Notes under the pieces: model-generated
What the model saw: the letters and a program-made list of their open reading frames with translations, nothing else
Databases searched by the model: none
Told to the model about the DNA's origin: nothing
Shown: one piece after another, positions 21,033 to 58,883 of the stretch
How the letters are laid out: every line of letters begins with the position of its first letter
Numbering within the stretch: the stretch's first letter is position 1
Virus record (IMG/VR): IMGVR_UViG_3300009177_000028
Coordinates: 140,388-204,387 of that record
DNA: 64,000 nt
Strand: one strand, 5' to 3'
Made by a program: the position numbers and the translations under genes

Positions 21033-21044
21033 TGGTCTTTGACA
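21033..21044 (+). promoter_or_regulatory. rrn-type boxA antitermination element
   Basis: TGGTCTTTGACA, 10/12 to E. coli boxA TGCTCTTTAACA. Confidence 0.5.
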
Positions 21045-21577
21045 ATCTAAACGTCTCACACGGGCGCCTCATGTGCGCCTACAGCGCGCGCCTAGCGCGT
21101 GTGCCTCCTACCTACGGTAAGGGACAGTGTGCGATAGCGGCGACCATATAGGTCCGCTCCTACCGCGTCCCACAATCACCGAGTAGCGCACACAACCGAA
21201 GCCACTGTGGGTTACATGCGGAAGATGTGTGGGCCAGGTGACCCGTCCTACATTCACTCCACACGGGAGACGATGTAGGCTACCCTCACCTAGTGTACGA
21301 ATCCCGAGGAGGGATAAACCGTAGGTAGGGCAATGTCCTGCTAGAGCCGACAATGTAGGCCGCGGTGAGGCGGTATGAGTCCGCAGCGTACGAATCAAGA
21401 GACTAAACGACTATGTGGGAGGGACGCCTAGAGTGTCCTTCCCCCGTAGCGTAAAGCCTACAAGGTAAGTAACTCTCTCCAAGTCTACGGTATTGGAGTA
21501 GGAGAGAACACCTTGTGAGCTTTACGCTGCGATCATCGCAGAGTGTCCCACAACAGCAGACAACAGGAGCCAACATC

Positions 21578-22150
21578 ATGAGCCAGACCACCAGCAACGA
21601 CAGCGCCGTCAAGTCGACCACCATCTCCTCCGATGTGGAGGAGCGTCTCACCGCCACCTTCAAGACCCTTCACCATCTCGTCTCCACCCACATGGTGAGT
21701 GCGGGTGCGAAGCTCACCTTCATGTCGGAGTTCGAGAAGTGTGGGATGGAGGACTACAAGGAGGTCGCGCATGCGGCACGGAAGCTGCTCGGCGCCAAGC
21801 GTCAGGAAAAGTGGGAGAACCGCATCAAGGGGATCCGTGCGGGGATCCAGGGTGTGGTCGACACCTACATGAACCGCAAACGTGCGGCCAAGGCGCAGTT
21901 CGACGCACTCCCGGAGGAGTTGCGCGCAGAAGGTGTGACCTTCAACCCCAACGTCTCCATCCCGGTGAAGGAGCTTGTGGGATGCTTCCCGCAGGGTGCG
22001 ACCCAGGAGCAGATCCTCCGAGACCTGAAGGATCTCTCCTACAACGTCATCCAGAATGCGGAAAAGGCGTACCTCATCCGCGTTGCCTTCGTTGCCGACA
22101 AGGTGGCAGACGAGGCGCCCAAGTCGGAGAAGACCGCCAAGGCGGCCTGA
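21578..22150 (+). CDS. hypothetical protein (first gene of the GC-rich run)
   Basis: AGGAG SD; strongly GC3-biased codons; ends KTAKAA. Confidence 0.85.
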   Translation: MSQTTSNDSAVKSTTISSDVEERLTATFKTLHHLVSTHMVSAGAKLTFMSEFEKCGMEDYKEVAHAARKLLGAKRQEKWENRIKGIRAGIQGVVDTYMNRKRAAKAQFDALPEELRAEGVTFNPNVSIPVKELVGCFPQGATQEQILRDLKDLSYNVIQNAEKAYLIRVAFVADKVADEAPKSEKTAKAA

Positions 22151-22173
22151 GCGCGCAGCGTTCCGCTGAGTCT

Positions 22174-22227
22174 CCTACATCCTGCTCCCAACTGCTCCCA
22201 TGTGGGGTGGTTGGGGGCAGTCGTAGG
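22174..22227 (+). ncRNA. intergenic hairpin family copy H1
   Basis: CCTAC-ATC-CTGCTCCCAAC...GTTGGGGGCAG-TC-GTAGG. Confidence 0.7.
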
Positions 22228-22252
22228 CGAGTCAACCACCAAGGAGGTTCAT

Positions 22253-22474
22253 GTGTTCCATACTCAGCCCAAGACCTACAAGAAGGTCTCTCTCCTCCAC
22301 AAGAACTACTTCGACCTACTCTGCGGCTCCAATGGCTACAGTAGGGAAGAGTACGACATCTGCGAGAAGGAAGACAATCTGGGGTTTCCTGTCTACACCG
22401 TGGACGTGTGGTCGCAAAGGTGCGACGACATGATGCAACGTGTGTTCAGCGAAGCCAACGGCTACAAGCGCTGA
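22253..22474 (+). CDS. hypothetical protein
   Basis: AAGGAGG SD then GTG 22253. Confidence 0.75.
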   Translation: MFHTQPKTYKKVSLLHKNYFDLLCGSNGYSREEYDICEKEDNLGFPVYTVDVWSQRCDDMMQRVFSEANGYKR

Positions 22475-22478
22475 TCTA

Positions 22479-22521
22479 CCTACACCATGCTCCCGAGGGT
22501 TACTTCGGGGGCATGAGTAGG
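22479..22521 (+). ncRNA. intergenic hairpin family copy H2
   Basis: CCTAC-ACC-ATGCTCCCGA...TCGGGGGCAT-GA-GTAGG (compensatory ATGC/GCAT). Confidence 0.72.
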
Positions 22522-22533
22522 AGGACCAGACAC

Positions 22534-22932
22534 ATGTACAAGTACGACGGACACTCCTTCAACATGTGCGAGGAGTGGTCGCAATGCCCACAACATCGAA
22601 CGGAGACCCACATGAAGGACAAGCTCGCTCAAGCGCCCGACCAGGTGCGACAGTTCGTACACGCTCTCATCTCCAACGCCAAAGAGGTGGAAGGGTGGGA
22701 AGTGTGCGACATGGAGGATGGCAAGTGCTTCGCTGACACCATAGCCCACATCGAGCACAAGGAAGACGGAAGGTGGGTGGTGTGCGACAACTACGAACGG
22801 TTCTTCTCTCTCATCTACACCTACACGGTGGCAGGCGAGTGGACCGTGCGCCGCATGTATGGCGAAGGTGGGGAGATGCCCTACAGCTTCGCCAAGTGTA
22901 TGGCGGATGCCTCCATCATGTTCACTGGCTGA
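22534..22932 (+). CDS. hypothetical protein
   Basis: AGGAGG SD; fills the space between H2 and H3. Confidence 0.75.
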   Translation: MYKYDGHSFNMCEEWSQCPQHRTETHMKDKLAQAPDQVRQFVHALISNAKEVEGWEVCDMEDGKCFADTIAHIEHKEDGRWVVCDNYERFFSLIYTYTVAGEWTVRRMYGEGGEMPYSFAKCMADASIMFTG

Positions 22933-22936
22933 TCCA

Positions 22937-22978
22937 CCTACGTCATGCCCTCATGTGTGTACATGGGGGCATTGGTAG
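22937..22978 (+). ncRNA. intergenic hairpin family copy H3
   Basis: CCTAC-GTC-ATGCCCTCATG...CATGGGGGCAT-TG-GTAG. Confidence 0.7.
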
Positions 22979-23019
22979 TGGGATTAGGCTCACTAACACC
23001 AAACAAGGGAGAATGTAAG

Positions 23020-23199
23020 ATGATCAAGTTCATTGTGGTTGTTCTGGCGTGCATCGGGGCATTCTTCGGTCTGGCGATTCTGTCGGGTCATGTCCCCCAG
23101 ATCTCCCACACCGCCTTCAACATCAGCACCTTTCAGGTCACGTGGTTGATGCTGGGCGTGTGTGCGACCGGGTTCGTCTCCTACAAGGTGTGCAAGTAA
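23020..23199 (+). CDS. small two-TM membrane protein, paralogue of 38068-38253
   Basis: MIKF...H.P...AF....WL..G.C...F..YK..K shared. Confidence 0.75.
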   Translation: MIKFIVVVLACIGAFFGLAILSGHVPQISHTAFNISTFQVTWLMLGVCATGFVSYKVCK

Positions 23200-23253
23200 A
23201 GGGTGCTGTAAGCGCCTAACGTACACATAACGTTACTCCAATCGAGGAAAACA

Positions 23254-23300
23254 GCGGCATATAGGCGCCTAGGTGGGTTCGACTCCCACATGCCGCCCTA
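23254..23300 (+). ncRNA. tRNA-like minihelix (acceptor stem plus T-arm)
   Basis: GCGGCAT/ATGCCGC 7-bp stem, TAGG-CG-CCTA mini-hairpin, GTGGG-TTCGACT-CCCAC T-arm. Confidence 0.5.
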
Positions 23301-23324
23301 AGTCATACATCAGCGGAGGATGTC

Positions 23325-23531
23325 ATGGTCAAGGTTACCAAGTGCCCCAATGTGGGTGATGCGGTCAAGATCGTCAAAGGCAAGAGGTCGGGTGATGTAG
23401 GCATCATCAAGCGATGTGCCTCGGTGTGGGGAGAGGACCGACTCAAGTGGTCGTCCTTCCTACTCGACATCAATGGTGAGGAAGTGTGGGTGCGTACGCA
23501 CCATGTGGAGAAACTGGAGAACGCGGCCTGA
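23325..23531 (+). CDS. KOW/SH3-like small protein
   Basis: VGDAVKIVKGKRSGDVGII KOW-like motif; ends ENAA. Confidence 0.6.
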   Translation: MVKVTKCPNVGDAVKIVKGKRSGDVGIIKRCASVWGEDRLKWSSFLLDINGEEVWVRTHHVEKLENAA

Positions 23532-23533
23532 CA

Positions 23534-23574
23534 CCCACACCCTGCTCCTAAGTAATCCTTGGGGGCAGAAGTGG
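23534..23574 (+). ncRNA. intergenic hairpin family copy H4
   Basis: CCCAC-ACC-CTGCTCC...GGGGGCAG-AA-GTGG (compensatory CCAC/GTGG). Confidence 0.7.
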
Positions 23575-23608
23575 TTGGCACGCTTGCATATAGCACAACG
23601 TATGCCAA
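23574..23608 (-). promoter_or_regulatory. repeated sigma54-type element, copy 4 (antisense)
   Basis: minus strand TTGG-CATACGTTGT-GC then TATATGCAAGCGTGCCAAC. Confidence 0.65.
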
Positions 23609-23620
23609 AGGAGGATTCCC

Positions 23621-24145
23621 ATGAAGATCAAGAGCCAGCGCACCACGACCTACACCGAGACCTACTCCCTCACCTTCGAGTACATCGGCTCCAATGGGAG
23701 CGGGTGTGCGTTCGACTGCGACAAGGAGGGAAAGGTCGACCTGACCAAGCTGCACCCGTGTGCGATTCTGACCTACACCGAAGCCAAGTTCGGACAGGTC
23801 ACCCGACGTGAGAACGTGCAGTACCGTGTGGGTGCAGATGGGGAATACGAGCCCATCCCCGGCACGGGTGAGATGGTCACCCGAGAGGTGAGCAAGGGTG
23901 AGGTCATCACCTACATCAACCGCCAGATCGTTCCTGCGGTGGGAGAGTGTGATTGTTGTGGGAGGGATGTCCACCTCTACGGTTTCACCAACACATGTGA
24001 GTGTGGGGCCGACTACAACATGTCGGGTCAGATGCTCGCTCCTCGTGAACAGTGGGGAGAGGAGACAGGTGAGACAGCCGCCGACATCCTCTCCTTCGAC
24101 TCCTACGATCGGGAGCCCATGGGCACCGATGAAGGATGGTTCTGA
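23621..24145 (+). CDS. hypothetical Cys-rich protein
   Basis: GGAGG SD; CDCC..C.C cluster. Confidence 0.8.
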   Translation: MKIKSQRTTTYTETYSLTFEYIGSNGSGCAFDCDKEGKVDLTKLHPCAILTYTEAKFGQVTRRENVQYRVGADGEYEPIPGTGEMVTREVSKGEVITYINRQIVPAVGECDCCGRDVHLYGFTNTCECGADYNMSGQMLAPREQWGEETGETAADILSFDSYDREPMGTDEGWF

Positions 24146-24161
24146 CAAAGTAGGAGTGCCG

Positions 24162-24203
24162 CCTACACCCTGCCTTCATGTGCAAGCATGAGGGTAGAAG
24201 TAG
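24162..24203 (+). ncRNA. intergenic hairpin family copy H5
   Basis: CCTAC-ACC-CTGCCTTCATG...CATGAGGGTAG-AA-GTAG (two G-U pairs on plus strand). Confidence 0.72.
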
Positions 24204-24237
24204 TTGGCATGCTTGCATGTAGCAGATTGTATGCCAA
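24203..24237 (-). promoter_or_regulatory. repeated sigma54-type element, copy 5 (antisense)
   Basis: minus strand TTGG-CATACAATCT-GC then TACATGCAAGCATGCCAAC. Confidence 0.65.
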
Positions 24238-24269
24238 TCGACCCCAAACACCCAAGGTAGGAGAGTGTC

Positions 24270-24830
24270 ATGAACTTCACGACCAAACCGGATACGTTCG
24301 TTCTCGTGGTGGCGGCCCTGTCGGATAAGCTGGTCCAGAAGGAGAACGAGTGTGTGGAGCTGCGAGACCACATCGCCTCCGACCATGCCAGCATGGACGA
24401 CATGCAGCGCACCATCACCGACCTGCGGGTCCAGTGTGAGCGACTGCAAGACAAGGCGGATGATGTGGACTACTTCCGCACTCGCTATCAGGACATGTCC
24501 CACAAGCTGGAGAACTACGAACACCTCCGCTCACAGAATGCCGAACTGTGGGAGCAGGTGCGAGTCCTGAAGATGGAGAACCACAAGCTCCGCTACGGTG
24601 GGCAGACTCCCGAGGAGACGGCCAACAACTACATGCTCTCCCAGGGGAGGCAGGTGTGGGAGCGTGGCAACAAGATTCAGTGCATCAAGGAGGTGCGAGA
24701 GGTGAGTGGATGGGGGCTGAAGGAAACCAAGGATTGGTGCGAAGCCTACATCGCCCGCCTGGATAACGAAAAGGAGGAGAGCGGCCCCGGTACCAAGCGC
24801 TCCTCCGGCAACGTAGCCAAAACTGGCTGA
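24270..24830 (+). CDS. coiled-coil protein with ribosomal bL12 (L7/L12) C-terminal-domain-like motif
   Basis: heptad-rich region then NKIQCIKEVREVSGWGLKETKDWCE. Confidence 0.65.
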   Translation: MNFTTKPDTFVLVVAALSDKLVQKENECVELRDHIASDHASMDDMQRTITDLRVQCERLQDKADDVDYFRTRYQDMSHKLENYEHLRSQNAELWEQVRVLKMENHKLRYGGQTPEETANNYMLSQGRQVWERGNKIQCIKEVREVSGWGLKETKDWCEAYIARLDNEKEESGPGTKRSSGNVAKTG

Positions 24831-24834
24831 CGCA

Positions 24835-24876
24835 CCTACACCCTGCCTCTATGTGTGAACATGGGGGCAGGAGTAG
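24835..24876 (+). ncRNA. intergenic hairpin family copy H6
   Basis: CCTAC-ACC-CTGCCTCTATG...CATGGGGGCAG-GA-GTAG. Confidence 0.72.
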
Positions 24877-24911
24877 CTGATTCAGACACAACACATGAAA
24901 GGAGAGAGGTC

Positions 24912-25037
24912 ATGAAGGTTCACAAGTCGCAGCGTGTGTTCCAAGAGGAGAAGAAGTATCCGGGTGTGGGTGCCCTCATCTGCGTCGGCTCTGGTCTCCT
25001 CTTTTGGGGGAGCTTGGCCTACCTCTTCGTTCACTGA
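24912..25037 (+). CDS. small membrane protein
   Basis: GAGG SD; C-terminal hydrophobic helix. Confidence 0.55.
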   Translation: MKVHKSQRVFQEEKKYPGVGALICVGSGLLFWGSLAYLFVH

Positions 25038-25057
25038 GGGAGTAGTGGGTCCAAGGG

Positions 25058-25092
25058 GTTGGCATGCTTGCATAGTGCAACATCCATGCCAC
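25058..25092 (-). promoter_or_regulatory. repeated sigma54-type element, copy 6 (antisense)
   Basis: minus strand GTGG-CATGGATGTT-GCA, canonical TTGCA -12 box. Confidence 0.7.
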
Positions 25093-25237
25093 AGCAGGCA
25101 TGTCGCCCCTACACCTACCTCAGAATACCTTCACCTATAATTCTTGTTGCACCTAACTTGAAACGTGCTAACTTATAATCTCGCCATTCTCGCAAGCCAA
25201 GGCCAAAACCTACATCGGCCCCATTAGGAGATAAGTC

Positions 25238-26131
25238 ATGAACGTGTATGAGATTGTCACCGAACGGATCATTGCAGCCCTGGAAAAGGGTGTCGTACCT
25301 TGGCGCATGCCCTGGCGTACCCAAGGTGGGAGCGGTCTCCCCAAGAACCTACAGAGTGGGAAGGAGTACCGAGGTGTCAACATCTTCCTACTGGGTGCGC
25401 AGGGGTACGCCTCTCCCTGGTGGGTTACCTACAAGCAGTGTACGGCCCGAGGTGGGCAGGTGCGCAAAGGTGAGAAGGGCACCCCGGTCATCTTCTGGAA
25501 GGTAGGAGATCATAAGACCAAGGTGGGCAAGAGTGGGAAACCGGAGAAGATGTTTATCCTCCGGTACTACACTGTCTTCAATGTCGCCCAGTGTGATGGG
25601 CTGGACTACCCCAAGGAGGCGGTGGTGGAAGCTCCCACCTTCGACCCCATCGAGCAATGCGAGAAGATCGTTCTCGCCTACAAGACCCTACCCAAGATTG
25701 AGCACGGAGGTGGGCGAGCCTGCTACTCCCCCTCCTTCGACAAGGTGATGATGCCGGAAAAGGAGAGCTTTGGTAAGAGGGAGGAATACTACTCCACACT
25801 CTTCCACGAGCTTACCCACAGCACCGGACATGAGAGCAGGTTGAACCGGGATGGGATCATGAATCCCATTCGGTTTGCCTCACATGACTACAGCTTTGAG
25901 GAGCTGGTAGCAGAATGTGGGGCGGCCTTTCTCTGCGCACATGCGGGTATCTTGGATACCACGCTGGACAACTCGGCCGCCTACATCTCCCACTGGGTGA
26001 GCAAGCTGAAGAGTGAGCCAAGGTGGATTGTGGAAGCCTCAAGTAAGGCAGCTAAGGCGGCTGACTACATCATGGGAGACCTGGTCAAAAAGGAGTCAGA
26101 GTCGGAGGAGTCAAGCGAGGAAGCCGCTTGA
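25238..26131 (+). CDS. ardC: ArdC-family ssDNA-binding antirestriction protein with zincin-like domain
   Basis: GVVPWRMPW, YRGVN, TYKQ..GGQVRKGEKG, YTVFNVAQ, TLFHELTHSTGH..RLNR, YSFEELVAE. Confidence 0.93.
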   Translation: MNVYEIVTERIIAALEKGVVPWRMPWRTQGGSGLPKNLQSGKEYRGVNIFLLGAQGYASPWWVTYKQCTARGGQVRKGEKGTPVIFWKVGDHKTKVGKSGKPEKMFILRYYTVFNVAQCDGLDYPKEAVVEAPTFDPIEQCEKIVLAYKTLPKIEHGGGRACYSPSFDKVMMPEKESFGKREEYYSTLFHELTHSTGHESRLNRDGIMNPIRFASHDYSFEELVAECGAAFLCAHAGILDTTLDNSAAYISHWVSKLKSEPRWIVEASSKAAKAADYIMGDLVKKESESEESSEEAA

Positions 26132-26218
26132 ACCGACATGTCAGGGACTGGGCTGGCCTACTCGGCTGGCTCAGTCTATTATCCTACATCCTCACACACA
26201 AGCCCTGAAAGGACGACC

Positions 26219-26638
26219 ATGAACGACAAGAGACCCTGGAATGAGGGAGGGGAGGAGAAGCCATATAGTGTCTCACTGTGGATACAGGATCCCTCCGACA
26301 TGAGTGACAATGACACATGTATGGCCGGGGAAGACTTCGCCACCGAAAAGGAAGCGCGAATGTGTCTGGCCGACATGAACGCACACTTCAATGACAGGTT
26401 CTACAAGGACGTACCTTATGTCCTGTTGGACGGCCCGAACGACCTACACGAGGTGACAGTGCGCACCCAAGCCCTCAAGCGGATGCAACGTGAGAGGGAG
26501 TGCGAGGACAGGGCGGCAAGGTCGGAGATGGCCATGCAAGCTGGGATGGGTATGGGCATTCATGCCTACAACGACATGATGGGATACGACTCTGAAGAGT
26601 ACGACCCTGACCTACACGGATACCTGCACGAAGACTGA
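26219..26638 (+). CDS. hypothetical protein
   Basis: AAAGGA SD; acidic. Confidence 0.75.
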   Translation: MNDKRPWNEGGEEKPYSVSLWIQDPSDMSDNDTCMAGEDFATEKEARMCLADMNAHFNDRFYKDVPYVLLDGPNDLHEVTVRTQALKRMQRERECEDRAARSEMAMQAGMGMGIHAYNDMMGYDSEEYDPDLHGYLHED

Positions 26639-26667
26639 GCAACCACAACAACCCGAAAGGTACGACC

Positions 26668-26886
26668 ATGAGCGACAACAACGGCAACAAGAGCGAAGGT
26701 AGCATCAAGACCGACAAGCGGAAGCAGTCTCTCTACTTTCCGGAGAGCATGCTCCAAGAGATCAAGGAGGAGGCGGCTCGGCTGGATCGTAGTCTGTCGT
26801 GGGTGGTTCAGCGTGCATGGAAGCTGGCACGCACCGAAGTCAAGAATCTGCCCAGCGTCTCCGACATCGAGACGGAGGACGAGTAA
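26668..26886 (+). CDS. MXAN_4361/MXAN_4362-family (TIGR04563-like) ribbon-helix-helix small protein
   Basis: DKRKQSLYFPESMLQEIKEEAARLDRSLSWVVQRAWKLAR matches the myxobacterial family as recalled. Confidence 0.88.
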   Translation: MSDNNGNKSEGSIKTDKRKQSLYFPESMLQEIKEEAARLDRSLSWVVQRAWKLARTEVKNLPSVSDIETEDE

Positions 26887-26894
26887 TCGTACCA

Positions 26895-26936
26895 CCTACA
26901 CCCTGCCCATTAGTGAGAGCTAGTGGGCAGGAGTAG
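26895..26936 (+). ncRNA. intergenic hairpin family copy H7
   Basis: CCTAC-ACC-CTGCCCATTAG...CTAGTGGGCAG-GA-GTAG. Confidence 0.72.
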
Positions 26937-26970
26937 TTGGCATGCTTGCATGTTGCACATCTCATGCCAC
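26936..26970 (-). promoter_or_regulatory. repeated sigma54-type element, copy 7 (antisense)
   Basis: minus strand GTGG-CATGAGATGT-GC then AACATGCAAGCATGCCAAC. Confidence 0.65.
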
Positions 26971-27004
26971 GGGGCGCCAGGCCCACACTCACCCACAATT
27001 CAGC

Positions 27005-27022
27005 GTGGCACATGACTTGCAT
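27005..27022 (+). promoter_or_regulatory. sigma54-type promoter (sense)
   Basis: GTGGCACATGACTTGCAT, canonical TGGCAC-N5-TTGC. Confidence 0.65.
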
Positions 27023-27079
27023 GTAATTGCATGGTCAATCAAAAGTGCTACAATTGATCAAAAGGAAAAGGAGGTTATC

Positions 27080-27313
27080 ATGTTTGGTATGAACAAGGCG
27101 CACATTGACACCGTCTATCAGCGAGAGGACGACATGTCCGACCTGATGCGCCGATGTCGGATGGCCCTCGACATGGGAGCCTCCAAGGAAGAAGTTCACG
27201 ACATCTGCATCCAAGCGGGTCAAAGTGAGGAACAAGCCTACTTGACCTACATCGCAGCCAAGCTGCTCACACGTGACGAAGCGTGCGAGACTGGCGCCCG
27301 AAAGGTGGCCTGA
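27080..27313 (+). CDS. hypothetical protein
   Basis: AAGGAGG SD, ATG 27080. Confidence 0.75.
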   Translation: MFGMNKAHIDTVYQREDDMSDLMRRCRMALDMGASKEEVHDICIQAGQSEEQAYLTYIAAKLLTRDEACETGARKVA

Positions 27314-27314
27314 C

Positions 27315-27791
27315 ATGTACTCCAAAGAGATCAAAGGTAGTTGGTTCGGCGTGACCATTCCCGAATGGTTGCGAGCCTTCGACTGTCGGTCCAGCGAGGA
27401 CGATATCGCACCTCGTACTCCCTGGGGCTCCTATCTCTGGTCAAGTGAGAGAGCTGCCGTGGACCTGGGCCTGCGTGCGGAAGGTGTCTACAACGACACT
27501 ACGCCCGTGGGCTGCTCCACCTACATCGATGCTCGTACGGCTCCTGAGTCGGAGTTGAAACGACAGGTGGAGAATATGGTGGCAGAGGCGACCAGACTTC
27601 GGGAGGAGTACCTAGAAGGGAAGAAGTTTCCCGATACTGAGGGACAAGGTGGGAGTTGTCTCTACATGCCGGTGGCTGTCTGCCTGAGTAACTTCGGGTG
27701 GTCGGTCCTGGCAGATCGGACCCAAGGAATCGTTCGCCGGTTTGGCTACAATGCCACACCCAAACGTACCAAGAAAGGAAGTGTGCGATGA
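27315..27791 (+). CDS. hypothetical protein
   Basis: abuts previous stop; ATGA overlap to next. Confidence 0.75.
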   Translation: MYSKEIKGSWFGVTIPEWLRAFDCRSSEDDIAPRTPWGSYLWSSERAAVDLGLRAEGVYNDTTPVGCSTYIDARTAPESELKRQVENMVAEATRLREEYLEGKKFPDTEGQGGSCLYMPVAVCLSNFGWSVLADRTQGIVRRFGYNATPKRTKKGSVR

Positions 27792-28390
27792 GCAAGTACA
27801 AGGGTGACGGGGCGTTGGAGCAGATCAACCCCGAGCGACTTACCTTGGGGTGTGTGGTGCGCATGCCCTACGGAAGTGGGGAAGTGCCTGCCTTTGGTGA
27901 CAGTGTCATCATCGGTATCCACGTCTCCTACTCTTCCAAGCGAACGAGTAAGGAGCGGTGCGATAAGCGCCACTACGAGACTCTCGCACAAGCTCTTACC
28001 CAAGCGCAGGATGGCGACTTCGTGGTGGTGAGTCTGGCTCGCCCCTACGTGTACGCCAACAACCCCTTCGTCTCTACACCGGGCTGGCTGGTCGGGTGCG
28101 AGAAGTACGAGGTGATGGGAGACCGCATCATCGACACCCACAAGGTGGTGGTTCAGAGCACGGGTGAGTATGCCACCTACAACATCAAACCTGCGCTCCA
28201 TTCGTGGGAGGTGGTGGTTGGCAACATCGGGAGCGTCTATCGCGACTTGTCGGAGAGCGCGGCCCGAGCCACCTACAAGGTGTACGTAGAGAACAGCAAG
28301 TGGCAGGGTGGACGTGCCAGTGGGGAAAGCGTCACTCTCTTCTGCGATGGTGAGATTGTGGAGGAGCATGTGGGGACGGTGGAAGGATGA
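27788..28390 (+). CDS. hypothetical protein
   Basis: coupled ORF, coding-like GC3. Confidence 0.75.
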   Translation: MSKYKGDGALEQINPERLTLGCVVRMPYGSGEVPAFGDSVIIGIHVSYSSKRTSKERCDKRHYETLAQALTQAQDGDFVVVSLARPYVYANNPFVSTPGWLVGCEKYEVMGDRIIDTHKVVVQSTGEYATYNIKPALHSWEVVVGNIGSVYRDLSESAARATYKVYVENSKWQGGRASGESVTLFCDGEIVEEHVGTVEG

Positions 28391-28629
28391 TTACATACCT
28401 CGACCCCAAACAAGTCATTGCCAAGCGCCAGACCACTCCTCCCCACAACCGGAGTCGCAGTGGGTATGGCAACAAGCTGCCTACATCCTGGGAGCTTCAA
28501 CTACAGGACAAGCGGTGGAGGCGGGTGTACGTGATTCAGTGGAGCAACGCTGGATCCGCCTACATCCTGGTCAAAGGTGAGAAGTTGTTCCTGGGTTCCT
28601 ACGAACCCTCCTATGAAGGGAAGGTGTGA
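28387..28629 (+). CDS. conserved phage-type hypothetical protein
   Basis: GYGNKLPT...RRVY..WSNAGSAY motif recalled from phage hypotheticals. Confidence 0.7.
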   Translation: MITYLDPKQVIAKRQTTPPHNRSRSGYGNKLPTSWELQLQDKRWRRVYVIQWSNAGSAYILVKGEKLFLGSYEPSYEGKV

Positions 28630-28630
28630 G

Positions 28631-29011
28631 ATGGGCTGGGATAAAGCATGCGGAGATGAGCAGTGTGAGGGATGTGACGCCACCCTGGAGGAAGGGGAGG
28701 ACATGTATGTCCAAGGGGACAGCGTGTACTGCGAAGGGTGCAACGAGGACCGCTTGGATGACGAAGCGGGTGAATGGGATGAATTGGACTACATGGACCG
28801 TGAAGGTGACTATCCCATCGATGGGGTAGGATTCGCGGACCCTGGTGGTCACTCGGCCCTACGTGCAGCTACACCCAACAACCCAAGGGACTGCGATTGT
28901 CCTACCTGTGGGGCGGAGGACGTTCTGACCCGCATCGACCGTCAACGTGGGTATCAGTGCGACAGGTGCGCTGATCGGGCGGAAGGTCGGAGCGGGTACG
29001 GAGACTACTGA
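28631..29011 (+). CDS. Zn-finger acidic protein
   Basis: several CxxC pairs (CEGC, CPTC, CDRC). Confidence 0.75.
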   Translation: MGWDKACGDEQCEGCDATLEEGEDMYVQGDSVYCEGCNEDRLDDEAGEWDELDYMDREGDYPIDGVGFADPGGHSALRAATPNNPRDCDCPTCGAEDVLTRIDRQRGYQCDRCADRAEGRSGYGDY

Positions 29012-29012
29012 C

Positions 29013-29330
29013 ATGAAGACACTGGTGCTGGTGGAGGATGATCTGATGCTTGCTAGCACCTTCATTCGGGTGTTGGGCAAAACTCACAACATCCTCCACT
29101 TCCTGACAGTCAAGGATGCCAGAGCACATCTGGCCTTGAATCCCACACCTGATGTCCTCCTCCTGGATCGTCAGGTGGGGTATGACAATGGGTGGGCGTT
29201 GCGGGAGGAGGTGGGTACGGGTGTCAGGGTGGTCCTGATGACGGGCGCTCCTCCCCAAGGCAATTCACTTACCTTCTTCCACAAGGGAGTAGATAACATA
29301 CAAAAACTTATCAGTATGGTAGAAGGCTAA
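29013..29330 (+). CDS. stand-alone receiver domain protein
   Basis: LVLVEDD, VLLLD, VLMTG, FHKG. Confidence 0.8.
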   Translation: MKTLVLVEDDLMLASTFIRVLGKTHNILHFLTVKDARAHLALNPTPDVLLLDRQVGYDNGWALREEVGTGVRVVLMTGAPPQGNSLTFFHKGVDNIQKLISMVEG

Positions 29331-29334
29331 ACTT

Positions 29335-29377
29335 CCTACACCCTGCCTATTAGAATTATCTAGTGGGCAGAAGTAGG
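29335..29377 (+). ncRNA. intergenic hairpin family copy H8
   Basis: CCTAC-ACC-CTGCCTATTAG...CTAGTGGGCAG-AA-GTAGG. Confidence 0.72.
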
Positions 29378-29421
29378 GGGATTCATCCTGAATCTTCTGA
29401 GACAAGGAAAGAGGAGAGCGC

Positions 29422-29976
29422 ATGAATAAGTTGGTGTATGCGGTAGTGGTTGCCTTGGCAGCGGTGGTGGGATGTGCAGCTCCGGTGGGAGACAAGTCGG
29501 AGCAGGTGGGACAGGTCAGTCAGGCGCTGGTTACCTTCGACCCTGCGACAGGGACGGGGTTTGTGGGGAAAGGTGATATCCAGCTTCCCTTCGGGTGGAA
29601 CAATGCCACCTTGCAGGCCAATGCAAGTTCGCTCACCTTCACCTACCAGAGCAGCGCCACCTACGAGGCGGTGTGCGAGTGGACCACCGGTGAAGGGACT
29701 CGTGGTCAACGGACCCACGATGTCACACACACCAAGACCAGTGTGGTCAACGACACCATCTCCTACGATGCTCGCACCCACAAGCAGGTGGACGGATTCT
29801 TCCTGACAGGGTACGGCAGTGTGACCGAAGGTGGGGAACCTGTTCCCGAGGTAGGAGGACCCTGCCCTGGCAACCCTGGAACGGATGGGGTGTGGGTCAG
29901 TGTGGTCCTGCTCAACTCCACGGGTGGGGGCTTGTGGGTGACCAACGCAGCGGGTGGGACGGCTCAGCTTCTGTAG
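29422..29976 (+). CDS. lipoprotein of unknown function
   Basis: lipobox LAAVVGC; FDPATGTGFVGKGDIQLPFGWNN motif recalled from bacterial secreted hypotheticals. Confidence 0.8.
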   Translation: MNKLVYAVVVALAAVVGCAAPVGDKSEQVGQVSQALVTFDPATGTGFVGKGDIQLPFGWNNATLQANASSLTFTYQSSATYEAVCEWTTGEGTRGQRTHDVTHTKTSVVNDTISYDARTHKQVDGFFLTGYGSVTEGGEPVPEVGGPCPGNPGTDGVWVSVVLLNSTGGGLWVTNAAGGTAQLL

Positions 29977-29984
29977 AGATACTT

Positions 29985-30058
29985 TCTACATCCTGCCGAT
30001 TATTCGTCTGGCTGATAAACTCGGTTTATTCGTCTGGCAGATAGTCGGCAGTAGTAGG
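29985..30058 (+). ncRNA. intergenic hairpin family copy H9 (extended)
   Basis: TCTAC-ATC-CTGCCGATTAT...ATAGTCGGCAG-TA-GTAGG; loop holds TATTCGTCTGGC twice (30001, 30027). Confidence 0.68.
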
Positions 30059-30304
30059 AGGTGTGTCATGTAATCGGCTAACTAACTTGTTTACCCGATA
30101 GTGTGGGAAACCCTGAGAGTGTGTCGCGACATTCAAGACATGGTGTATTGAATGGGCGCATGTGAGAATCCACGATACCCCAAGAGCTTTTGACGACAAT
30201 GTAGTTCTAAGTCTTCTATTACTCGCCTATAACCGAAACCTGCCGAAAGGGTGGGGAGTAGGTTATGGGCGCACATAGAGGGATTAGAAAGGAAAGGCAA
30301 GACC

Positions 30305-30769
30305 ATGCACGACATCAACGGCAAACCACTTCACATCGGCTCGGACATCTACTCTTCCCTACATGGACTCTGCAAGATCGTCGGTGTGCGAGAGGAGCAC
30401 AATCCCGACCAGGGAGGAGCTTGCATCGAGGTAAACTCCTACACTCGGGGTGGAGGTATCATCCTTCGCACTCACGAGCACAAGGTGACCAAGGTGCGTA
30501 CTTGGAAGGAGATGGCGGATGAATCCCTACGGGTGCAGGATGCCTGCAACCTGTCGGGAGTGGTCCACGCTTTCTCTACCATCATCACCGAGGTGCGCAC
30601 ACGGTTGGACAGTGAGGGCCAGGGTGGGACGGACAACGTCAACAACCATCCTGTCTGTCGTCTCTTCTCCGACAAGATTGCTTCCCTGACGGGTACGCAA
30701 TTCTGCAACGATGACGCACACCAAAACTTCTCCGATGCCTACAAGTGGGCACACGAGCAGAGCAAGTGA
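30305..30769 (+). CDS. hypothetical protein
   Basis: SD-like GGAAAGG; GTGA overlap to next. Confidence 0.75.
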   Translation: MHDINGKPLHIGSDIYSSLHGLCKIVGVREEHNPDQGGACIEVNSYTRGGGIILRTHEHKVTKVRTWKEMADESLRVQDACNLSGVVHAFSTIITEVRTRLDSEGQGGTDNVNNHPVCRLFSDKIASLTGTQFCNDDAHQNFSDAYKWAHEQSK

Positions 30770-31705: not shown

Positions 31706-31709
31706 TTGT

Positions 31710-31754: not shown

Positions 31755-31782
31755 CGAATCAACGCCAACAACGGAGGATGTC

Positions 31783-32600: not shown

Positions 32601-32604
32601 GACA

Positions 32605-54750: not shown

Positions 54751-54795
54751 CTGGCATACATCTTGCTAGTGGGTAAGATTGGCATAAACTTTGCA
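54751..54795 (+). promoter_or_regulatory. two tandem sigma54-type promoters
   Basis: CTGGCATACATCTTGCT (54751) and TTGGCATAAACTTTGCA (54779), both GG-N10-GC with TTGC. Confidence 0.7.
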
Positions 54796-54854: not shown

Positions 54855-56435
54855 ATGCAGCCGATTGATGGTTATTCTAAACCGCTGCTGGACGTGGCTA
54901 ATCCGTTGGACCAATTGGTTGATGTGGCTGAGAAGCATCTCGCCCAAGAACCTACATTGTTCCAGAAGGCGGGTGAGCTAGTATGTATCCTGAAAGACCA
55001 CAATGGTCGTTTAGCTCTCAAACCTACCAAGTCATCCATCATCCGATATCTATTGAGTCGGGTGATTACTTGGTGCAATGAAGGCGAGAGGATCCATCCT
55101 CCTACTTCAGTTGCCAAGTGTTTGGTGGACAAAAGTGGTTGGCAGAATGTCCGCAAGCTGCGGTCTCTCACCACCTTTCCGCCCATTGGAGCTAATGGAT
55201 CCATCAATACTACAGAGGGATATCATCCTGATACTTACGTCTACTTTACAGGCGAAGTAGACTGTAAGATTCCGGATCATCCTACTCAGCAGGATGCTAA
55301 GCGAGCTGTCAGTATTCTTACTGACATTGTATGTGATTTCCCTTTTGCAGAAGAGGGGCATCGTTCGGCTTGGTTGGCCGGTCTCCTTTCTCCACTCTCC
55401 CGTTTTGCTCACGATGGGAATACTCCCATGGTGGTAGTTCAGGCTAATGGTCCGAGGGTAGGTAAAACCAGTCTCGTCAAGATCATCTCCTATATCCTGA
55501 CAGGTGATGAGTGTCCAGTTGTTACTCATACCAAGAATGAGGATGAAACCAGAAAGAGGATTTTGTCCTACCTGAGGATTGGTAGGAGCATGGTTCTGGT
55601 GGATAACGTAGTCGGTGAATATGGTGGAGCTGCCATCAACGCCATGGCTACCAGTCGTCAGTGGGAGGATCGTGTCCTAGGTCATTCTAAGGTTCTACAA
55701 GTACAGAATGATACTACATGGTTCATCACTGGTAACAATATCCTACTGGCCCCCGATACAGCGGAACGGTGTTTGAATATCCGACTTCGTTGTTTGGATG
55801 AGAAACCACATCTTCGTACAGGATTCAAGTATCCTGATTTGTGGAATGTGGTAAGAGAGCGTCGAGCCGAATTGCTCAGTTCCGCACTCATCATTCTCAA
55901 AGCCTACATTATGGCAGGGATGCCGGATCAGAAGTTGCCCAAGTGGGGAAGCTTTGAGCAGTGGTCCAAACTGGTTCGTGGAGCCCTAGTGTGGGCTGGA
56001 GCAGTTGATCCTGCTACCACTAGGCAAGAGTTGGAGATGGAGTCTGATGTAGGCAGATACACTGCCAATGGAATCATCGAAGGATGGTTGCAATTGCAGC
56101 AGATGGTGGGAGCTAAAGATGGGCTTACCACTCGTGAAGCCTATGATTTTATCTCACAAGGTTTGATGGTACCTTCATTGCGAGATGCGTTGGAGGAGAT
56201 TGCGGGCGGTGTAGGGAAACTCCCTAATGCTCATACCATTGGAAGACATCTGCGGGAGATCAAAGACCGTAACTTCAATGGTAAGTGTCTTCGGTGTGTG
56301 CCGAATGATAAGACGGGACATCGTTGGTATGTTGCTGATCTTGGTGGTTCGGGGACAGGGGGACAGGGGGGACAGGATTCGGCCCGAAAAACTAACGGGC
56401 TCAATGGCCATACCAATGGCACGAATCATGCTTGA
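54855..56435 (+). CDS. P-loop ATPase, primase-associated/SF3-like helicase type
   Basis: Walker A GPRVGKT; VLVDNV; RVLGHS; ITGNN; D..RC..IRL; no recognisable primase domain. Confidence 0.65.
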   Translation: MQPIDGYSKPLLDVANPLDQLVDVAEKHLAQEPTLFQKAGELVCILKDHNGRLALKPTKSSIIRYLLSRVITWCNEGERIHPPTSVAKCLVDKSGWQNVRKLRSLTTFPPIGANGSINTTEGYHPDTYVYFTGEVDCKIPDHPTQQDAKRAVSILTDIVCDFPFAEEGHRSAWLAGLLSPLSRFAHDGNTPMVVVQANGPRVGKTSLVKIISYILTGDECPVVTHTKNEDETRKRILSYLRIGRSMVLVDNVVGEYGGAAINAMATSRQWEDRVLGHSKVLQVQNDTTWFITGNNILLAPDTAERCLNIRLRCLDEKPHLRTGFKYPDLWNVVRERRAELLSSALIILKAYIMAGMPDQKLPKWGSFEQWSKLVRGALVWAGAVDPATTRQELEMESDVGRYTANGIIEGWLQLQQMVGAKDGLTTREAYDFISQGLMVPSLRDALEEIAGGVGKLPNAHTIGRHLREIKDRNFNGKCLRCVPNDKTGHRWYVADLGGSGTGGQGGQDSARKTNGLNGHTNGTNHA

Positions 56436-57212: not shown

Positions 57213-57244
57213 TCCTTCCGGAGCGACCAGAGTGTAATGTGGGG

Positions 57245-57281
57245 AAAGCCCGGTCTCAGCGAAAGCTGAGCCGGGCTTTTC
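57245..57281 (+). terminator. intrinsic terminator
   Basis: AAAGCCCGG(T)CTCAGC-GAAA-GCTGAGCCGGGCTTTT. Confidence 0.85.
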
Positions 57282-57315
57282 GCTTTGGATCCAATCTCTC
57301 AGCATGTAGGGCATC

Positions 57316-58071
57316 ATGATGAAATCGGTTCTGTCATTCGGCTTGGTCTCGATTCCAGTAGAGATTCAGAATACAGTGGCCCCTAATGGAGGCATGTGCT
57401 GGCTATCTCCACAAGGTAATCGAGTATCAGTAGAGTACGTTGACAGTGTGACCGGAGAACGTCTGGTGCGCAATCAGCTCCTTCATGGAGTAGAGGTAAT
57501 CAAGGAAAAGTATGTTACCTTCACCAATGCAGAGCTAAAGGCATTGTTGGATGATAGGGGTAATACCATCCTGATTCAACAGGTAATACCAATTCGAGCA
57601 CTTTCCCTTCATGGTGTGGAAAAGTCATACTACCTGACCCCACATAAGATCCATAAACCATACCGTCTACTACATAGTTGCCTAAAGTCTTCCAACAGGG
57701 CTGCTGTAGGTAAATGGCATACGAGGGGCAAAGACCACCTTGTCTTACTTTACCCTACACCTAGCTCATTGGTCATGCTTCAGCTACACTATCAGACCGA
57801 GTTACGGGAGGTGTGCTTCAGCTTTGCCAAGGGATCCGAGCCCAATCGGCAAGAGGTCGCATTAGCGAACGAATTGCTTGACAGGCTTGCCTCAGACGGG
57901 TTAGATGTGGCGTCCTATCAGGACGAGTATGCCCAGCGCTTGCGTGCCGCAGTTGAGGCAAAACAAGCAGGGAACCCGGATCTCGCGACATTACTACGTA
58001 AGTCGCTGAAAGGCAAACATGAAGGTAGAGCTAAGGGACGCCAAAGTCGAGCTGGAGGTAGGAGAAGGTAA
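57316..58071 (+). CDS. ku: Ku (NHEJ/Gam-like) DNA end-binding protein
   Basis: LSFGLVSIPV, VDSVTGE, YVTFT..EL, EKSYYL.P, YRLL..L....AVG, LH(Y)..ELR, E..LA..L, YQDEY..RL...V.AK. Confidence 0.88.
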   Translation: MMKSVLSFGLVSIPVEIQNTVAPNGGMCWLSPQGNRVSVEYVDSVTGERLVRNQLLHGVEVIKEKYVTFTNAELKALLDDRGNTILIQQVIPIRALSLHGVEKSYYLTPHKIHKPYRLLHSCLKSSNRAAVGKWHTRGKDHLVLLYPTPSSLVMLQLHYQTELREVCFSFAKGSEPNRQEVALANELLDRLASDGLDVASYQDEYAQRLRAAVEAKQAGNPDLATLLRKSLKGKHEGRAKGRQSRAGGRRR

Positions 58072-58378
58072 ACACTTTCTCCACATCAACGGACAGAATG
58101 TCCCAATTCCGAGAGATGTAGGTGTAGCCCTCATCTTTGGAGAAGAAAAACCTCGACCTGCCCCTACCGCCCCGACCAAACCATGTCCACCTTCCAAGGC
58201 GGAGAGGAAGTACGGGTGTCAGACACCATCCGCCAGGAAGAAGCTCTCAGCATCTCTCCTCAAGTTTCACGCCAAACGTAGGCGAAAGGAAGCCGCTGAA
58301 CTGAAAAAGGGCACTCCGGCCAAGAAACATCTCAATGGGAAGTCCCACCTCAACGGTGCCGGGCTCCACATCAACTAA
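58019..58378 (+). CDS. basic hypothetical protein
   Basis: SARKKLSASLLKFHAKRRR basic helix. Confidence 0.65.
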   Translation: MKVELRDAKVELEVGEGKHFLHINGQNVPIPRDVGVALIFGEEKPRPAPTAPTKPCPPSKAERKYGCQTPSARKKLSASLLKFHAKRRRKEAAELKKGTPAKKHLNGKSHLNGAGLHIN

Positions 58379-58388
58379 GAGCAAAAAC

Positions 58389-58465
58389 CAAACGGCCCCT
58401 ACTTCGTAGGCCGATCTCACTCAGTGTGGTGAGGTTGGACCTTCGACTAGGGGCCGTTTTTATTT
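58389..58465 (+). terminator. long hairpin/terminator
   Basis: AAACGGCCCCTA...TAGGGGCCGTTTTTATTT. Confidence 0.75.
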
Positions 58466-58789
58466 GTCCTACGTATCCTACATTTCCCTACATAGTTACC
58501 CACTGTAGTCGTCAAGCAAATACCATGCCATGACGCGGTAACGCAGCCAGCTACGCAAAGAGTGCAAAGTTGCCACAATCTTGCGTACCGAGCAAAAGTG
58601 CCACAACCGTAGGCTTTACGGCTTAGCTACGATGTAGGTGTCGCAACTTTTTGCAGACTGCCACAACGGCCGAGGTCGGGCGGTAGATCGCAGTGCCCTG
58701 GTAGCTCGTGGTCTAATTGACTTGGTTTTCCGGGCAATTACGAGCTTCAATTGTACCCTGCTGGTCTCAGTGTGAATGACCTGCGAAAG

Positions 58790-58806
58790 CTGGCATGGCA
58801 TTAGCA
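58790..58806 (+). promoter_or_regulatory. sigma54-type promoter
   Basis: CTGGCATGGCATTAGCA, GG-N10-GC, about 60 nt upstream of boxA. Confidence 0.55.
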
Positions 58807-58864
58807 ATAGCTCTCATCACGTGGCAACCAGCCACAAAGCAAAAGCAGAATAGCAATTCTGCCA

Positions 58865-58883
58865 TGCTCTTTGAAAACTGAAT
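58865..58883 (+). promoter_or_regulatory. rrn-type boxA antitermination element
   Basis: TGCTCTTTGAAAACTGAAT; 10/12 to E. coli boxA and like the TCTTTGAAAACTGAA form of many rrn leaders. Confidence 0.7.

What the first reader, a model, noticed from the sequence alone, without database searches (positions are those of the whole stretch)
21033..58883. Two rRNA-operon-type boxA elements, each just downstream of a sigma54-type promoter
Seen: TGGTCTTTGACA at 21033 (about 100 nt after the 20916 promoter) and TGCTCTTTGAAAACTGAAT at 58865 (about 60 nt after the 58790 promoter). Both precede several hundred nt of non-coding, hairpin-rich leader and a long plus-strand gene run. Knowledge: boxA recruits NusB-NusE(S10) with NusA, NusG and SuhB for rrn antitermination. 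Inference: the element hijacks host rrn antitermination; no N-like protein or boxB is recognisable in the window.
Basis: partly seen in the sequence, partly recalled or inferred. Interest (0 to 1): 0.7.

Follow-up and report, generated by a model that had tools for sequence, protein, structure and literature searches.

The report
rRNA-type boxA elements in phage leaders
A large soil phage carries, just after two sigma-54-style promoters, exact or near copies of the short RNA signal (boxA) that bacteria place in front of their ribosomal RNA genes. It probably borrows the host's rRNA anti-termination machinery to transcribe long, folded, untranslated leaders and the genes behind them.

Summary
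Both sequences are present as described, on the + strand, in ORF-free leaders. By the E. coli consensus alone they are not significant (3 hits against 1.7 expected). Three other tests make them real.

1. The site-2 19-mer TGCTCTTTGAAAACTGAAT is identical to a sequence found in at least 120 bacterial species genomes. Of those loci, 54 lie just upstream of 16S or 23S rRNA.
2. In diverged relatives of the phage (first protein 43-57% identical), the -24/-12 promoter, a hairpin with compensatory changes and the boxA are all kept at the same spacing. At site 1 the boxA is the longest conserved island in an otherwise diverged leader.
3. A relative with a short leader keeps the promoter but has no boxA.

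Leader 2 is a conserved structured RNA: 79-82% nucleotide identity, against 62-64% for the gene behind it. The 3' half of its boxA pairs with a conserved segment next to the ribosome-binding site.

Best reading: these are rrn-type, N-independent boxA elements that load host NusB-S10. Binding and read-through are untested, the host is unknown, and a Polyangiaceae host is unsupported. I rate it a new variant of a known kind.

The parts
20917..20934 (+). Sigma-54-type (-24/-12) promoter-like site TGGCACCGACCCTGCAAT upstream of leader 1.
   Evidence: It is conserved as TTGGCAACGATCCTGCAAT at the same relative place in relative L160.
21000..21024 (+). Hairpin (GACAGCGCACA / TGCGCGCTGTC) ending 8 nt before boxA-1, in the boxB-like position of rrn leaders.
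   Evidence: I9; -16.2 kcal/mol. L160 has a different hairpin sequence in the same place.
21033..21050 (+). boxA-1, TGGTCTTTGACAATCTAA. This is the spacer-type (..GACAA) form, with an unusual G at position 3.
   Evidence: L160 has TGTTCTTTGACAATCTAA, 17 of 18 identical, and this is the longest conserved block of the leader. TGTTCTTTGACAA occurs in real 16S-23S spacers.
20943..21577 (+). Leader 1, about 635 nt, untranslated and strongly structured. The 5' end is inferred from the promoter.
   Evidence: z = -7.1; no ORF; no gene called in 4 assemblies.
21578..22150 (+). First gene after leader 1 (190 aa, unknown function). It heads a + strand run that includes ArdC at 25238-26131.
   Evidence: Relatives L159 and L160 also have ArdC downstream.
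58791..58808 (+). Sigma-54-type promoter-like site TGGCATGGCATTAGCAAT upstream of leader 2.
   Evidence: TGGCATG-N4-(C/G/T)(T/A)GCAAT is invariant in five lineages while the spacer varies.
58845..58862 (+). Hairpin GCAGAAT-AGCA-ATTCTGC ending 2 nt before boxA-2.
   Evidence: Compensatory changes in relatives: GCAGAAC/GTTCTGC and GCGGAAC/GTTTCGC.
58865..58883 (+). boxA-2, TGCTCTTTGAAAACTGAAT, of the leader type. It is an exact copy of the rrn-leader 19-mer of many bacterial phyla.
   Evidence: It is conserved in relatives L154, L155/L156, L161 and L164.
58872..58883 (+). 5' strand of a long-range helix, overlapping the 3' half of boxA-2.
   Evidence: 12 of 12 complementary to 59170-59181. The helix UUGAAAACUG / CAGUUUUCAA is kept in 4 lineages.
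59170..59181 (+). 3' strand of the long-range helix (ATTCAGTTTTCA), 5 nt before the Shine-Dalgarno sequence GAGAGGAG (59186-59193).
   Evidence: CAGTTTTCA is invariant inside an otherwise variable stretch.
58818..59199 (+). Leader 2, about 380 nt and untranslated. Its core (58865 to about 59115) is a conserved structured RNA. The 5' end is inferred.
   Evidence: z = -5.1; core 79-82% nt identity against 62-64% for the gene; consensus fold with 6 compensatory pairs. No Rfam family.
59200..59706 (+). First gene after leader 2 (168 aa, unknown function).

Best explanation
Both elements are genuine rrn-type boxA RNA signals built into the 5' part of two long, untranslated, highly structured leaders of a jumbo-phage gene region. 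That region encodes ArdC, Ku, a primase-like protein and many small genes.

Proposed sequence of events:
1. Transcription starts at a -24/-12 (sigma-54-type) promoter. (Inferred.)
2. A hairpin and then boxA emerge within the first 50-100 nt. (The order is shown in the sequence.)
3. Host NusB-S10 binds the single-stranded GCUCUUUG / GGUCUUUG core. With NusA, NusG and SuhB or its equivalent, it converts RNA polymerase into the termination-resistant form used on rRNA operons. (Inferred.)
4. The polymerase can then cross 330-550 nt of ribosome-free RNA, which would otherwise be open to Rho, and continue into the genes. (Inferred.)
5. As proposed for pre-rRNA, holding boxA at the polymerase would also keep the 5' strand of the leader-2 closing helix close until its partner next to the ribosome-binding site is made, and so help the leader fold. 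(Inferred.)

No phage N-like protein is required.
For: Match to real rrn boxA:
- The site-2 19-mer is identical to a sequence in at least 120 species genomes.
- Of those loci, 46 lie 55-330 nt before 16S and 8 lie in the spacer before 23S. Another 28 sit at contig ends.
- Real operons carry a leader type (..GAAAA) and a spacer type (..GACAA). The phage has one of each.
- Both sites keep G2, C5, U6 and U8, the positions that NusB-S10 reads (PMC3177189).

Conservation in relatives:
- In leader 2, promoter, hairpin (with compensatory changes) and boxA keep the same spacing in five lineages whose first protein is about 55% identical.
- In leader 1, boxA is the longest conserved block between the window and L160, whose first protein is 43% identical.
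- L157 keeps the promoter but has a leader of only about 100 nt and no boxA.

Other support:
- The boxA core is unpaired in the consensus fold.
- There are no + strand intrinsic-terminator-like sites in 21500-41000. This fits an anti-Rho role rather than an anti-hairpin role.
- The same 19-mer lies in intergenic DNA shortly upstream of genes in other viral contigs, none of them next to rRNA.
Against: - No binding or read-through data exist. The structure job was not folded and no RNA run was listed.
- The host is unknown, so its own boxA could not be compared directly.
- Site 1 has G at position 3. This was not seen in 25 other rrn boxA-like sequences sampled, and its flank ATCTAA is not rrn-linked in 695 genomes sampled.
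- One relative, L164, has U6 changed to A in the core while the 3' half stays invariant. So part of the constraint is structural rather than NusB-S10 binding.
- Sigma-54 promoters need an enhancer-binding ATPase, and none is encoded in the 204 kb held.
- Internal sigma-70-like promoters mean that long-range antitermination may not be needed for the distal genes.
Confidence: 0.6

Rival explanations
1. The conserved sequence is kept as RNA structure, not as a Nus site. It would be one strand of a leader-closing helix that controls access to the ribosome-binding site or marks an RNase III-type processing stem. Its likeness to boxA would be incidental.
For: TGAAAACTGAAT pairs perfectly with ATTCAGTTTTCA 5 nt before the Shine-Dalgarno sequence. 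The helix is kept in four lineages. L164 changes the boxA core (TCATT) but not the 3' half. The whole leader core is more conserved than the gene behind it.
Against: - The 19 of 19 identity with the rrn-leader sequence of many phyla is unlikely to be incidental.
- The GCTCTTT core is unpaired yet conserved in 4 of 5 lineages.
- Site 1 is conserved in L160 without any conserved long-range partner.
- The two roles are not exclusive. In pre-rRNA, boxA also sits next to the leader strand of a long-range helix (PMC10250234, abstract).
Confidence: 0.2
2. The elements are real Nus-binding boxA sites but act negatively, as in E. coli suhB. There the Nus complex on the 5' UTR blocks translation and so promotes Rho termination. 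Here this would act as a brake or timer on the phage genes.
For: A precedent exists in PMC5725501. boxA-2 is linked by pairing to the region around the ribosome-binding site.
Against: The boxA elements lie 335-545 nt from the start codons, much further than the 50-nt window used for boxA sites of this kind in PMC5725501. Their position 50-100 nt after the promoter, behind a hairpin, matches rrn leaders.
Confidence: 0.1
3. The elements are DNA-level sites (an operator or part of a promoter), or an intrinsic terminator or attenuator made of the hairpin plus a T-rich tail.
For: The simple scan lists the hairpin at 58845-58862 with the tail CATGCTCTTT as terminator-like. boxA-1 contains TTGACA.
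Against: The T run is only 3 long and is interrupted. No -10 element follows TTGACA at 16-18 nt, either in the window or in L160. The strand-specific match to an RNA signal and the compensatory changes in the hairpin both argue for an RNA function.
Confidence: 0.05
4. The two matches are chance matches.
For: Against the E. coli consensus with up to 2 mismatches there are 3 hits against 1.7 expected.
Against: Both are conserved in diverged relatives at a fixed position. The 19-mer is identical to rrn leaders. There are 2 hits against 0.01 expected for the multi-phylum rrn form.
Confidence: 0.03

Closest known systems
Bacterial rrn leader and spacer antitermination signals (boxB-boxA-boxC; the rrnTAC of NusA, NusB, NusE/S10, NusG, SuhB and S4)
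   Same: The boxA sequence is the same (site 2 is identical over 19 nt). boxA lies within about 50-100 nt of the transcription start and directly after a hairpin. It sits ahead of long, structured, untranslated RNA. In leader 2 it lies next to the 5' strand of a long-range helix. No phage protein is needed.
   Different: The elements are in a phage and in front of protein-coding genes, not rRNA. They follow a -24/-12 promoter rather than strong sigma-70 rrn promoters. No boxC could be assigned. Site 1 has G at position 3.
Lambdoid nut sites (boxA-boxB with N protein)
   Same: A phage uses boxA and host Nus factors for processive antitermination of early operons.
   Different: In nut sites the order is boxA then boxB, the boxA is a weak variant (CGCUCUUA), and N bound to boxB is essential. 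Here the order is hairpin then boxA, the boxA has the full rrn form, and no N-like gene was identified (none was searched for exhaustively).
boxA in the 5' UTR of cellular genes (E. coli and Salmonella suhB; predicted for other genes; PMC5725501)
   Same: An rrn-type boxA lies in the leader of a protein-coding gene.
   Different: Those sites are close to the start codon and act negatively. Here the boxA is far from the start codon and at the 5' end of a long leader.
Cis-acting antiterminator RNAs (HK022 put, Bacillus EAR)
   Same: Both involve a conserved structured RNA at the start of a long operon.
   Different: There is no sequence or Rfam match. Those RNAs act without boxA. That the leader-2 core acts on polymerase is only a possibility.

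Membership tests
rrn-type boxA (NusB-S10 binding RNA) | Sequence fits the boxA of real rRNA operons and keeps the positions read by NusB-S10 (G2, C5, U6, U8). | tested here: met
   Site 2 is TGCTCTTTGAAAA, identical to 47 leader and 8 spacer boxAs retrieved. Site 1 is TGGTCTTTGACAA and keeps G2, C5, U6 and U8, but G3 is not seen in the rrn sample.
rrn-type boxA (NusB-S10 binding RNA) | Lies on the transcribed strand, early in the transcript, in non-coding RNA. | tested here: met
   Both are on the + strand, 59 and 101 nt after conserved promoter-like sites, with no ORF. The transcription start itself was not mapped.
rrn-type boxA (NusB-S10 binding RNA) | The core is single-stranded. | tested here: met
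   GCUCUUU is unpaired in the consensus fold of four lineages, while the 3' half is paired in a long-range helix. For site 1 the single-sequence fold is not robust.
rrn-type boxA (NusB-S10 binding RNA) | Evolutionary conservation beyond that of its surroundings. | tested here: met
   One lineage (L164) has U6 changed to A.
rrn-type boxA (NusB-S10 binding RNA) | Binds the NusB-S10 heterodimer of the host. | not testable with these tools
   The complex job was returned unfolded, and the host is unknown.
rrn-type boxA (NusB-S10 binding RNA) | Confers Nus-dependent read-through of Rho-dependent terminators. | not testable with these tools
   No transcript data are available.
Lambdoid nut site | boxA is followed by a boxB hairpin that binds an N protein encoded nearby. 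| tested here: not met
   The conserved hairpin is 5' of boxA, not 3'. No N-like protein was identified among the proteins scanned.
Sigma-54 (-24/-12) promoter | GG and GC are spaced 10 nt apart within TGGCAC-N5-TTGCW, and these blocks are conserved while the spacer varies. | tested here: met
Sigma-54 (-24/-12) promoter | Depends on sigma-54 and an enhancer-binding ATPase. | tested here: inconclusive
   Neither PF00158 nor PF04552 is in the 204 kb held, but the contig is only about 48% of the genome and the host could supply both.

The most novel reading that the evidence does not exclude
The roughly 300-nt leader-2 RNA, and perhaps leader 1, is a new class of phage RNA built like a miniature pre-rRNA. 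It has boxA at the 5' end, a closing leader-trailer-type helix and a conserved folded core, and it is transcribed by a Nus-modified polymerase that also chaperones its folding. Such an RNA could be a processive antiterminator in its own right. Alternatively it could be a decoy that draws NusB-S10 away from host rRNA operons during infection.
Probability: 0.15. Interest if true: 0.85.

Novelty: new variant of a known kind. Interest (0 to 1): 0.6.

Why it matters
boxA-dependent antitermination in phages is textbook only for lambdoid phages, where it needs the N protein. An N-independent, full rrn-type boxA in the leaders of an uncultured jumbo phage, behind sigma-54-type promoters, would show three things:

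- Phages outside the lambdoid group tap the rRNA transcription machinery directly.
- The signal is portable across many phyla, because the 19-mer is nearly universal.
- Long structured phage leaders may be transcribed and folded the way pre-rRNA is.

The same 19-mer lies in intergenic DNA of other, unrelated viral contigs. It also lies before non-rRNA genes in bacteria, such as recA in an Acidobacteriota genome. Both suggest that the Nus regulon is wider than is currently annotated.

Tried and rejected
- Stop-codon recoding as the reason for the short ORFs in the high-GC part. No coherent long frames appear under any recoding.
- Assembly chimera at the 40% to 55% GC jump. Rejected, because three independent assemblies span the junction.
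- Known RNA families. None at gathering score or at E up to 5 in either leader.
- Homology between the two leaders. None beyond chance.
- Close relatives in annotated phage and plasmid collections, or in viral contigs by single-protein query. None found.
- A long-range partner for boxA-1. One is found in the window (22 nt, 77%) but it is not kept in L160, so it was dropped.
- Host assignment. ArdC (about 48% to Bacillales, Desulfovibrio and Hymenobacter plasmids), the tail sheath (about 30% to Bacillus phage G), and Atlas taxa for Ku and the L12-like protein all gave no decision.
- The site-1 flank as a host marker. It is not rrn-linked in 695 genomes sampled.
- Phage RNA polymerase among the large proteins. 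No such domains were found; the large proteins are tail and fibre-like.
- NusB-S10-RNA modelling. The job was not folded.
- RNA-seq runs. None was listed.
Full report
**Setting.** The window is the last 64 kb of a 204,387-bp IMG/VR contig from a soil or rhizosphere metagenome. CheckV estimates the contig at about 48% of the genome. The first 140 kb encode tail-sheath and tail-fibre-like proteins and other very large proteins, with no RNA polymerase domains, so this is a large tailed phage. GC content is about 40% up to window position ~14 kb and 52-58% from 21 kb onward. Three independent assemblies span the junction, so it is not a chimera. The high-GC part is a run of mostly small + strand genes. 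It includes ArdC (25238-26131), Ku (57316-58071), a primase-like protein (54855-56435), single-domain response regulators and two L7/L12-C-terminal-like proteins.

**The observation.** Both sequences are present as described.
- boxA-1, TGGTCTTTGACAA, is at 21033-21045. It lies 101 nt after TGGCACCGACCCTGCA (20917-20932) and 545 nt before the ATG at 21578.
- boxA-2, TGCTCTTTGAAAACTGAAT, is at 58865-58883. It lies 59 nt after TGGCATGGCATTAGCA (58791-58806) and 335 nt before the ATG at 59200.
- Neither leader has a + strand ORF longer than 40 aa.
- Both leaders fold much better than shuffles, z = -7.1 and -5.1.
- Each boxA is preceded by a stable hairpin that ends 2-8 nt upstream.

**Is it more than chance?** Against the E. 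coli consensus with up to 2 mismatches it is not: 3 hits against 1.7 expected. Three other tests settle the question.

*Test 1: match to real rRNA operons.* I scanned one genome from each of 185,579 prokaryote species for the exact site-2 19-mer. The hits span Acidobacteriota, Verrucomicrobiota, Planctomycetota, Bdellovibrionota, Nitrospirota, Desulfobacterota, Spirochaetota, Poribacteria, Bacillota and others.
- Rfam confirmed rRNA genes next to the match in 6 of 18 loci tested.
- A BLAST classification of all 120 placed 46 matches 55-330 nt upstream of 16S, 8 in the spacer before 23S, 3 next to rRNA in some other arrangement, 28 too close to a contig end to judge, and 35 with no rRNA within 1.5 kb.
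- So site 2 is letter-for-letter the widespread rrn-leader boxA with its 3' flank.
- Real operons carry a leader form (..TCTTTGAAAA) and often a spacer form (..TCTTTGACAA). Position 3 is C, T or A.
- The phage has one of each form. TGNTCTTTGAMAA occurs twice in the window against 0.01 expected.
- The only other such match in the contig is inside an ORF.

*Test 2: conservation in relatives.* The proteins encoded just after each leader have relatives at 39-57% identity in other metagenomes.
- Leader 2, five lineages (window, L154, L155/L156, L161, L164). All keep TGGCATG-N4-NWGCAAT with a variable spacer, then a hairpin with compensatory changes (GCAGAAT/ATTCTGC, GCAGAAC/GTTCTGC, GCGGAAC/GTTTCGC), then boxA with the invariant TTGAAAACTGAATCCTGACA. 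The 5' end of boxA varies: TGCTC, CGGTC, and CGCTCA in L164.
- Leader 1, window against L160 (first protein 43% identical). The leader is otherwise diverged, and the longest conserved block is the boxA: TGGTCTTTGACAATCTAA against TGTTCTTTGACAATCTAA. It again follows a hairpin of different sequence and a conserved TTGGCA(C/A)CGA(C/T)CCTGCAAT. L160's 13-mer is a form found in real spacers.

*Test 3: boxA goes with the long leader.* A more distant relative, L157, keeps the -24/-12 site but has a leader of only about 100 nt and no boxA.

**What else the leaders are.**
- The leader-2 core (boxA plus 245 nt) is 79-82% identical at the nucleotide level between lineages. The first gene is 62-64% identical and the upstream DNA 51-60%.
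- The consensus fold has 82 pairs, 6 of them with compensatory changes.
- The fold includes a 10-bp long-range helix between the 3' half of boxA (UUGAAAACUG) and CAGUUUUCAA, which lies 5 nt before the Shine-Dalgarno sequence. CAGTTTTCA is invariant inside a variable stretch.
- The GCUCUUU core stays unpaired.
- boxA-2 is therefore both a boxA and the 5' strand of a leader-closing helix. This recalls boxA next to the leader-trailer helix of pre-rRNA (PMC10250234, abstract).
- No Rfam family matches either leader, and the two leaders are not homologous to each other.

**The promoters.** Sites of the form TGGYAY-N5-YWGCA number 11 in the contig against 1.3 expected. Seven are in the high-GC part, and most of these are in intergenic gaps (gene calls). 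Conservation of the -24 and -12 blocks with variable spacers supports real -24/-12 promoters. No sigma-54 gene or enhancer-binding ATPase gene is in the 204 kb held, so the activator is unknown.

**Mechanism.** Shown:
- sequence identity to rrn boxA;
- retention of G2, C5, U6 and U8, the bases read by NusB-S10 (PMC3177189);
- the order promoter, hairpin, boxA;
- conservation in relatives;
- an unpaired core;
- co-occurrence with long untranslated leaders.

Inferred: NusB-S10 binds, an rrn-type complex forms with NusA, NusG and SuhB, the polymerase resists Rho across the ribosome-free leader, and leader folding is assisted. No + strand intrinsic-terminator-like site lies in 21500-41000, which fits an anti-Rho role. 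Good sigma-70-like promoters inside the run (45456, 49311, 50578) mean that a single 37-kb transcript is not established.

**Points against or unresolved.**
- Site 1 has G at position 3, which is not seen in my rrn sample. L154 and L161 also use G there, so this phage lineage appears to tolerate it.
- L164 has U6 changed to A.
- The site-1 flank is not an rrn sequence in 695 genomes sampled.
- The host is unknown. The hints are weak and mixed, and nothing points to Polyangiaceae.
- The NusB-S10-RNA modelling job was not folded and gives no evidence either way.
- No RNA-seq run was listed.

**Comparison and novelty.** The elements work like rrn leader signals: hairpin, then boxA, with no phage factor. 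They do not fit a lambdoid nut site, where boxA is followed by boxB and N is required. They differ from suhB-type 5' UTR boxA sites in their distance from the start codon. My literature searches returned only rrn, lambdoid and suhB-type cases. They were not exhaustive. I therefore rate this a new variant of a known kind.

**Wider pattern.** The same 19-mer occurs in 16 viral-contig loci, none beside rRNA. Twelve have no covering ORF of 100 aa or more, and many lie 39-90 nt before a same-strand ORF. It also occurs before non-rRNA genes in bacteria, for example 87 nt upstream of recA in an Acidobacteriota genome. Use of boxA outside rRNA operons may therefore be common.

Noticed in passing
window 14000-21000 (contig 154-161 kb): GC content jumps sharply from about 40% to 52-58%. 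The high-GC part runs to the contig end. Three independent assemblies span the junction, so it is real. Its origin is unexplained; it could be an acquired module or a distinct early region.
   Followed up: partly
window 19853-20900: The upstream ~1 kb of the 1.7-kb non-coding gap (19853-21577) that ends at the leader-1 gene contains three ~34-bp near-palindromes of the form TTGGYATG..TTGCAATATGCAA..CATGCCAA (about 20232, 20382, 20460; a fourth on the - strand at 25091). It also has short tandem CATATGG-type repeats, an AT-rich inverted repeat, and a GC-rich long hairpin whose loop is inverted in assembly L004. L160 also has three TGGCA..TTGCAATATGCAA elements upstream. These could be operators, tandem promoters or an origin.
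   Followed up: partly
window 58572, 58600, 58660, 58831: The motif GCCACAA is repeated four times, three of them 130-220 nt upstream of the 58791 promoter. This may be an enhancer or activator site. GCCACA also recurs upstream in L154 and L155.
   Followed up: partly
window 54752-54795: Two tandem sigma-54-like sites (TGGCATACATCTTGCT and TGGCATAAACTTTGCA) lie 60-100 nt before the primase-like gene at 54855. The leader there is short and has no boxA.
   Followed up: no
window 24270-24830 and 61091-61414: Two small proteins hit the ribosomal L7/L12 C-terminal domain (PF00542; the first hit is weak). One lies in each boxA-led gene run. Their function is unknown.
   Followed up: partly
window 14242-15459 (-), 32805-33221, 34676-35062, 36072-36416: The phage encodes a histidine kinase (HisKA and HATPase_c domains) and several single-domain CheY-like response regulators. 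Relative L154 carries the same kinds of genes.
   Followed up: no
window 9017-17778: About 19 tandem + strand ORFs of 110-140 aa are distant paralogues of one another (20-29% identity, BLASTP E down to 1e-12). This is an expanded small-protein family.
   Followed up: partly
window 64000 (contig end): Contigs from other assemblies (L005, L008) stop within about 36 nt of the same position. This suggests a physical genome end or a repeat boundary just beyond the window.
   Followed up: no
window 20000-64000, intergenic regions: CCTACAT and ATGTAGG, and also GAGTAGG, are over-represented in the intergenic regions and leaders. Their meaning is unknown.
   Followed up: no
L046:6128-7504; L025, L047, L057, L108, L120, L122: The exact rrn boxA 19-mer lies 87 nt upstream of recA in an Acidobacteriota (Acidiferrales) genome. 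It also occurs in several copies behind a TATAGT-like box and a hairpin: three in one Candidatus Angelobacter genome (L025, L047, L057) and three near-identical copies (L108, L120, L122) whose source genomes were not shown. None of these is next to rRNA.
   Followed up: partly
L138-L153 (viral contigs): Sixteen viral-contig loci carry the exact 19-mer, none beside rRNA. Most are intergenic, and several lie 39-90 nt before a same-strand ORF (for example L141, L144, L148). boxA may be used by other, unrelated phages.
   Followed up: partly
L159:37-56 (- strand): In this relative of the leader-1 gene there is no + strand boxA. Instead, a boxA-like TGCTCTTTCACAA lies on the opposite strand, about 480 nt downstream of two - strand sigma-54-like sites. 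This may be a rearranged leader.
   Followed up: no
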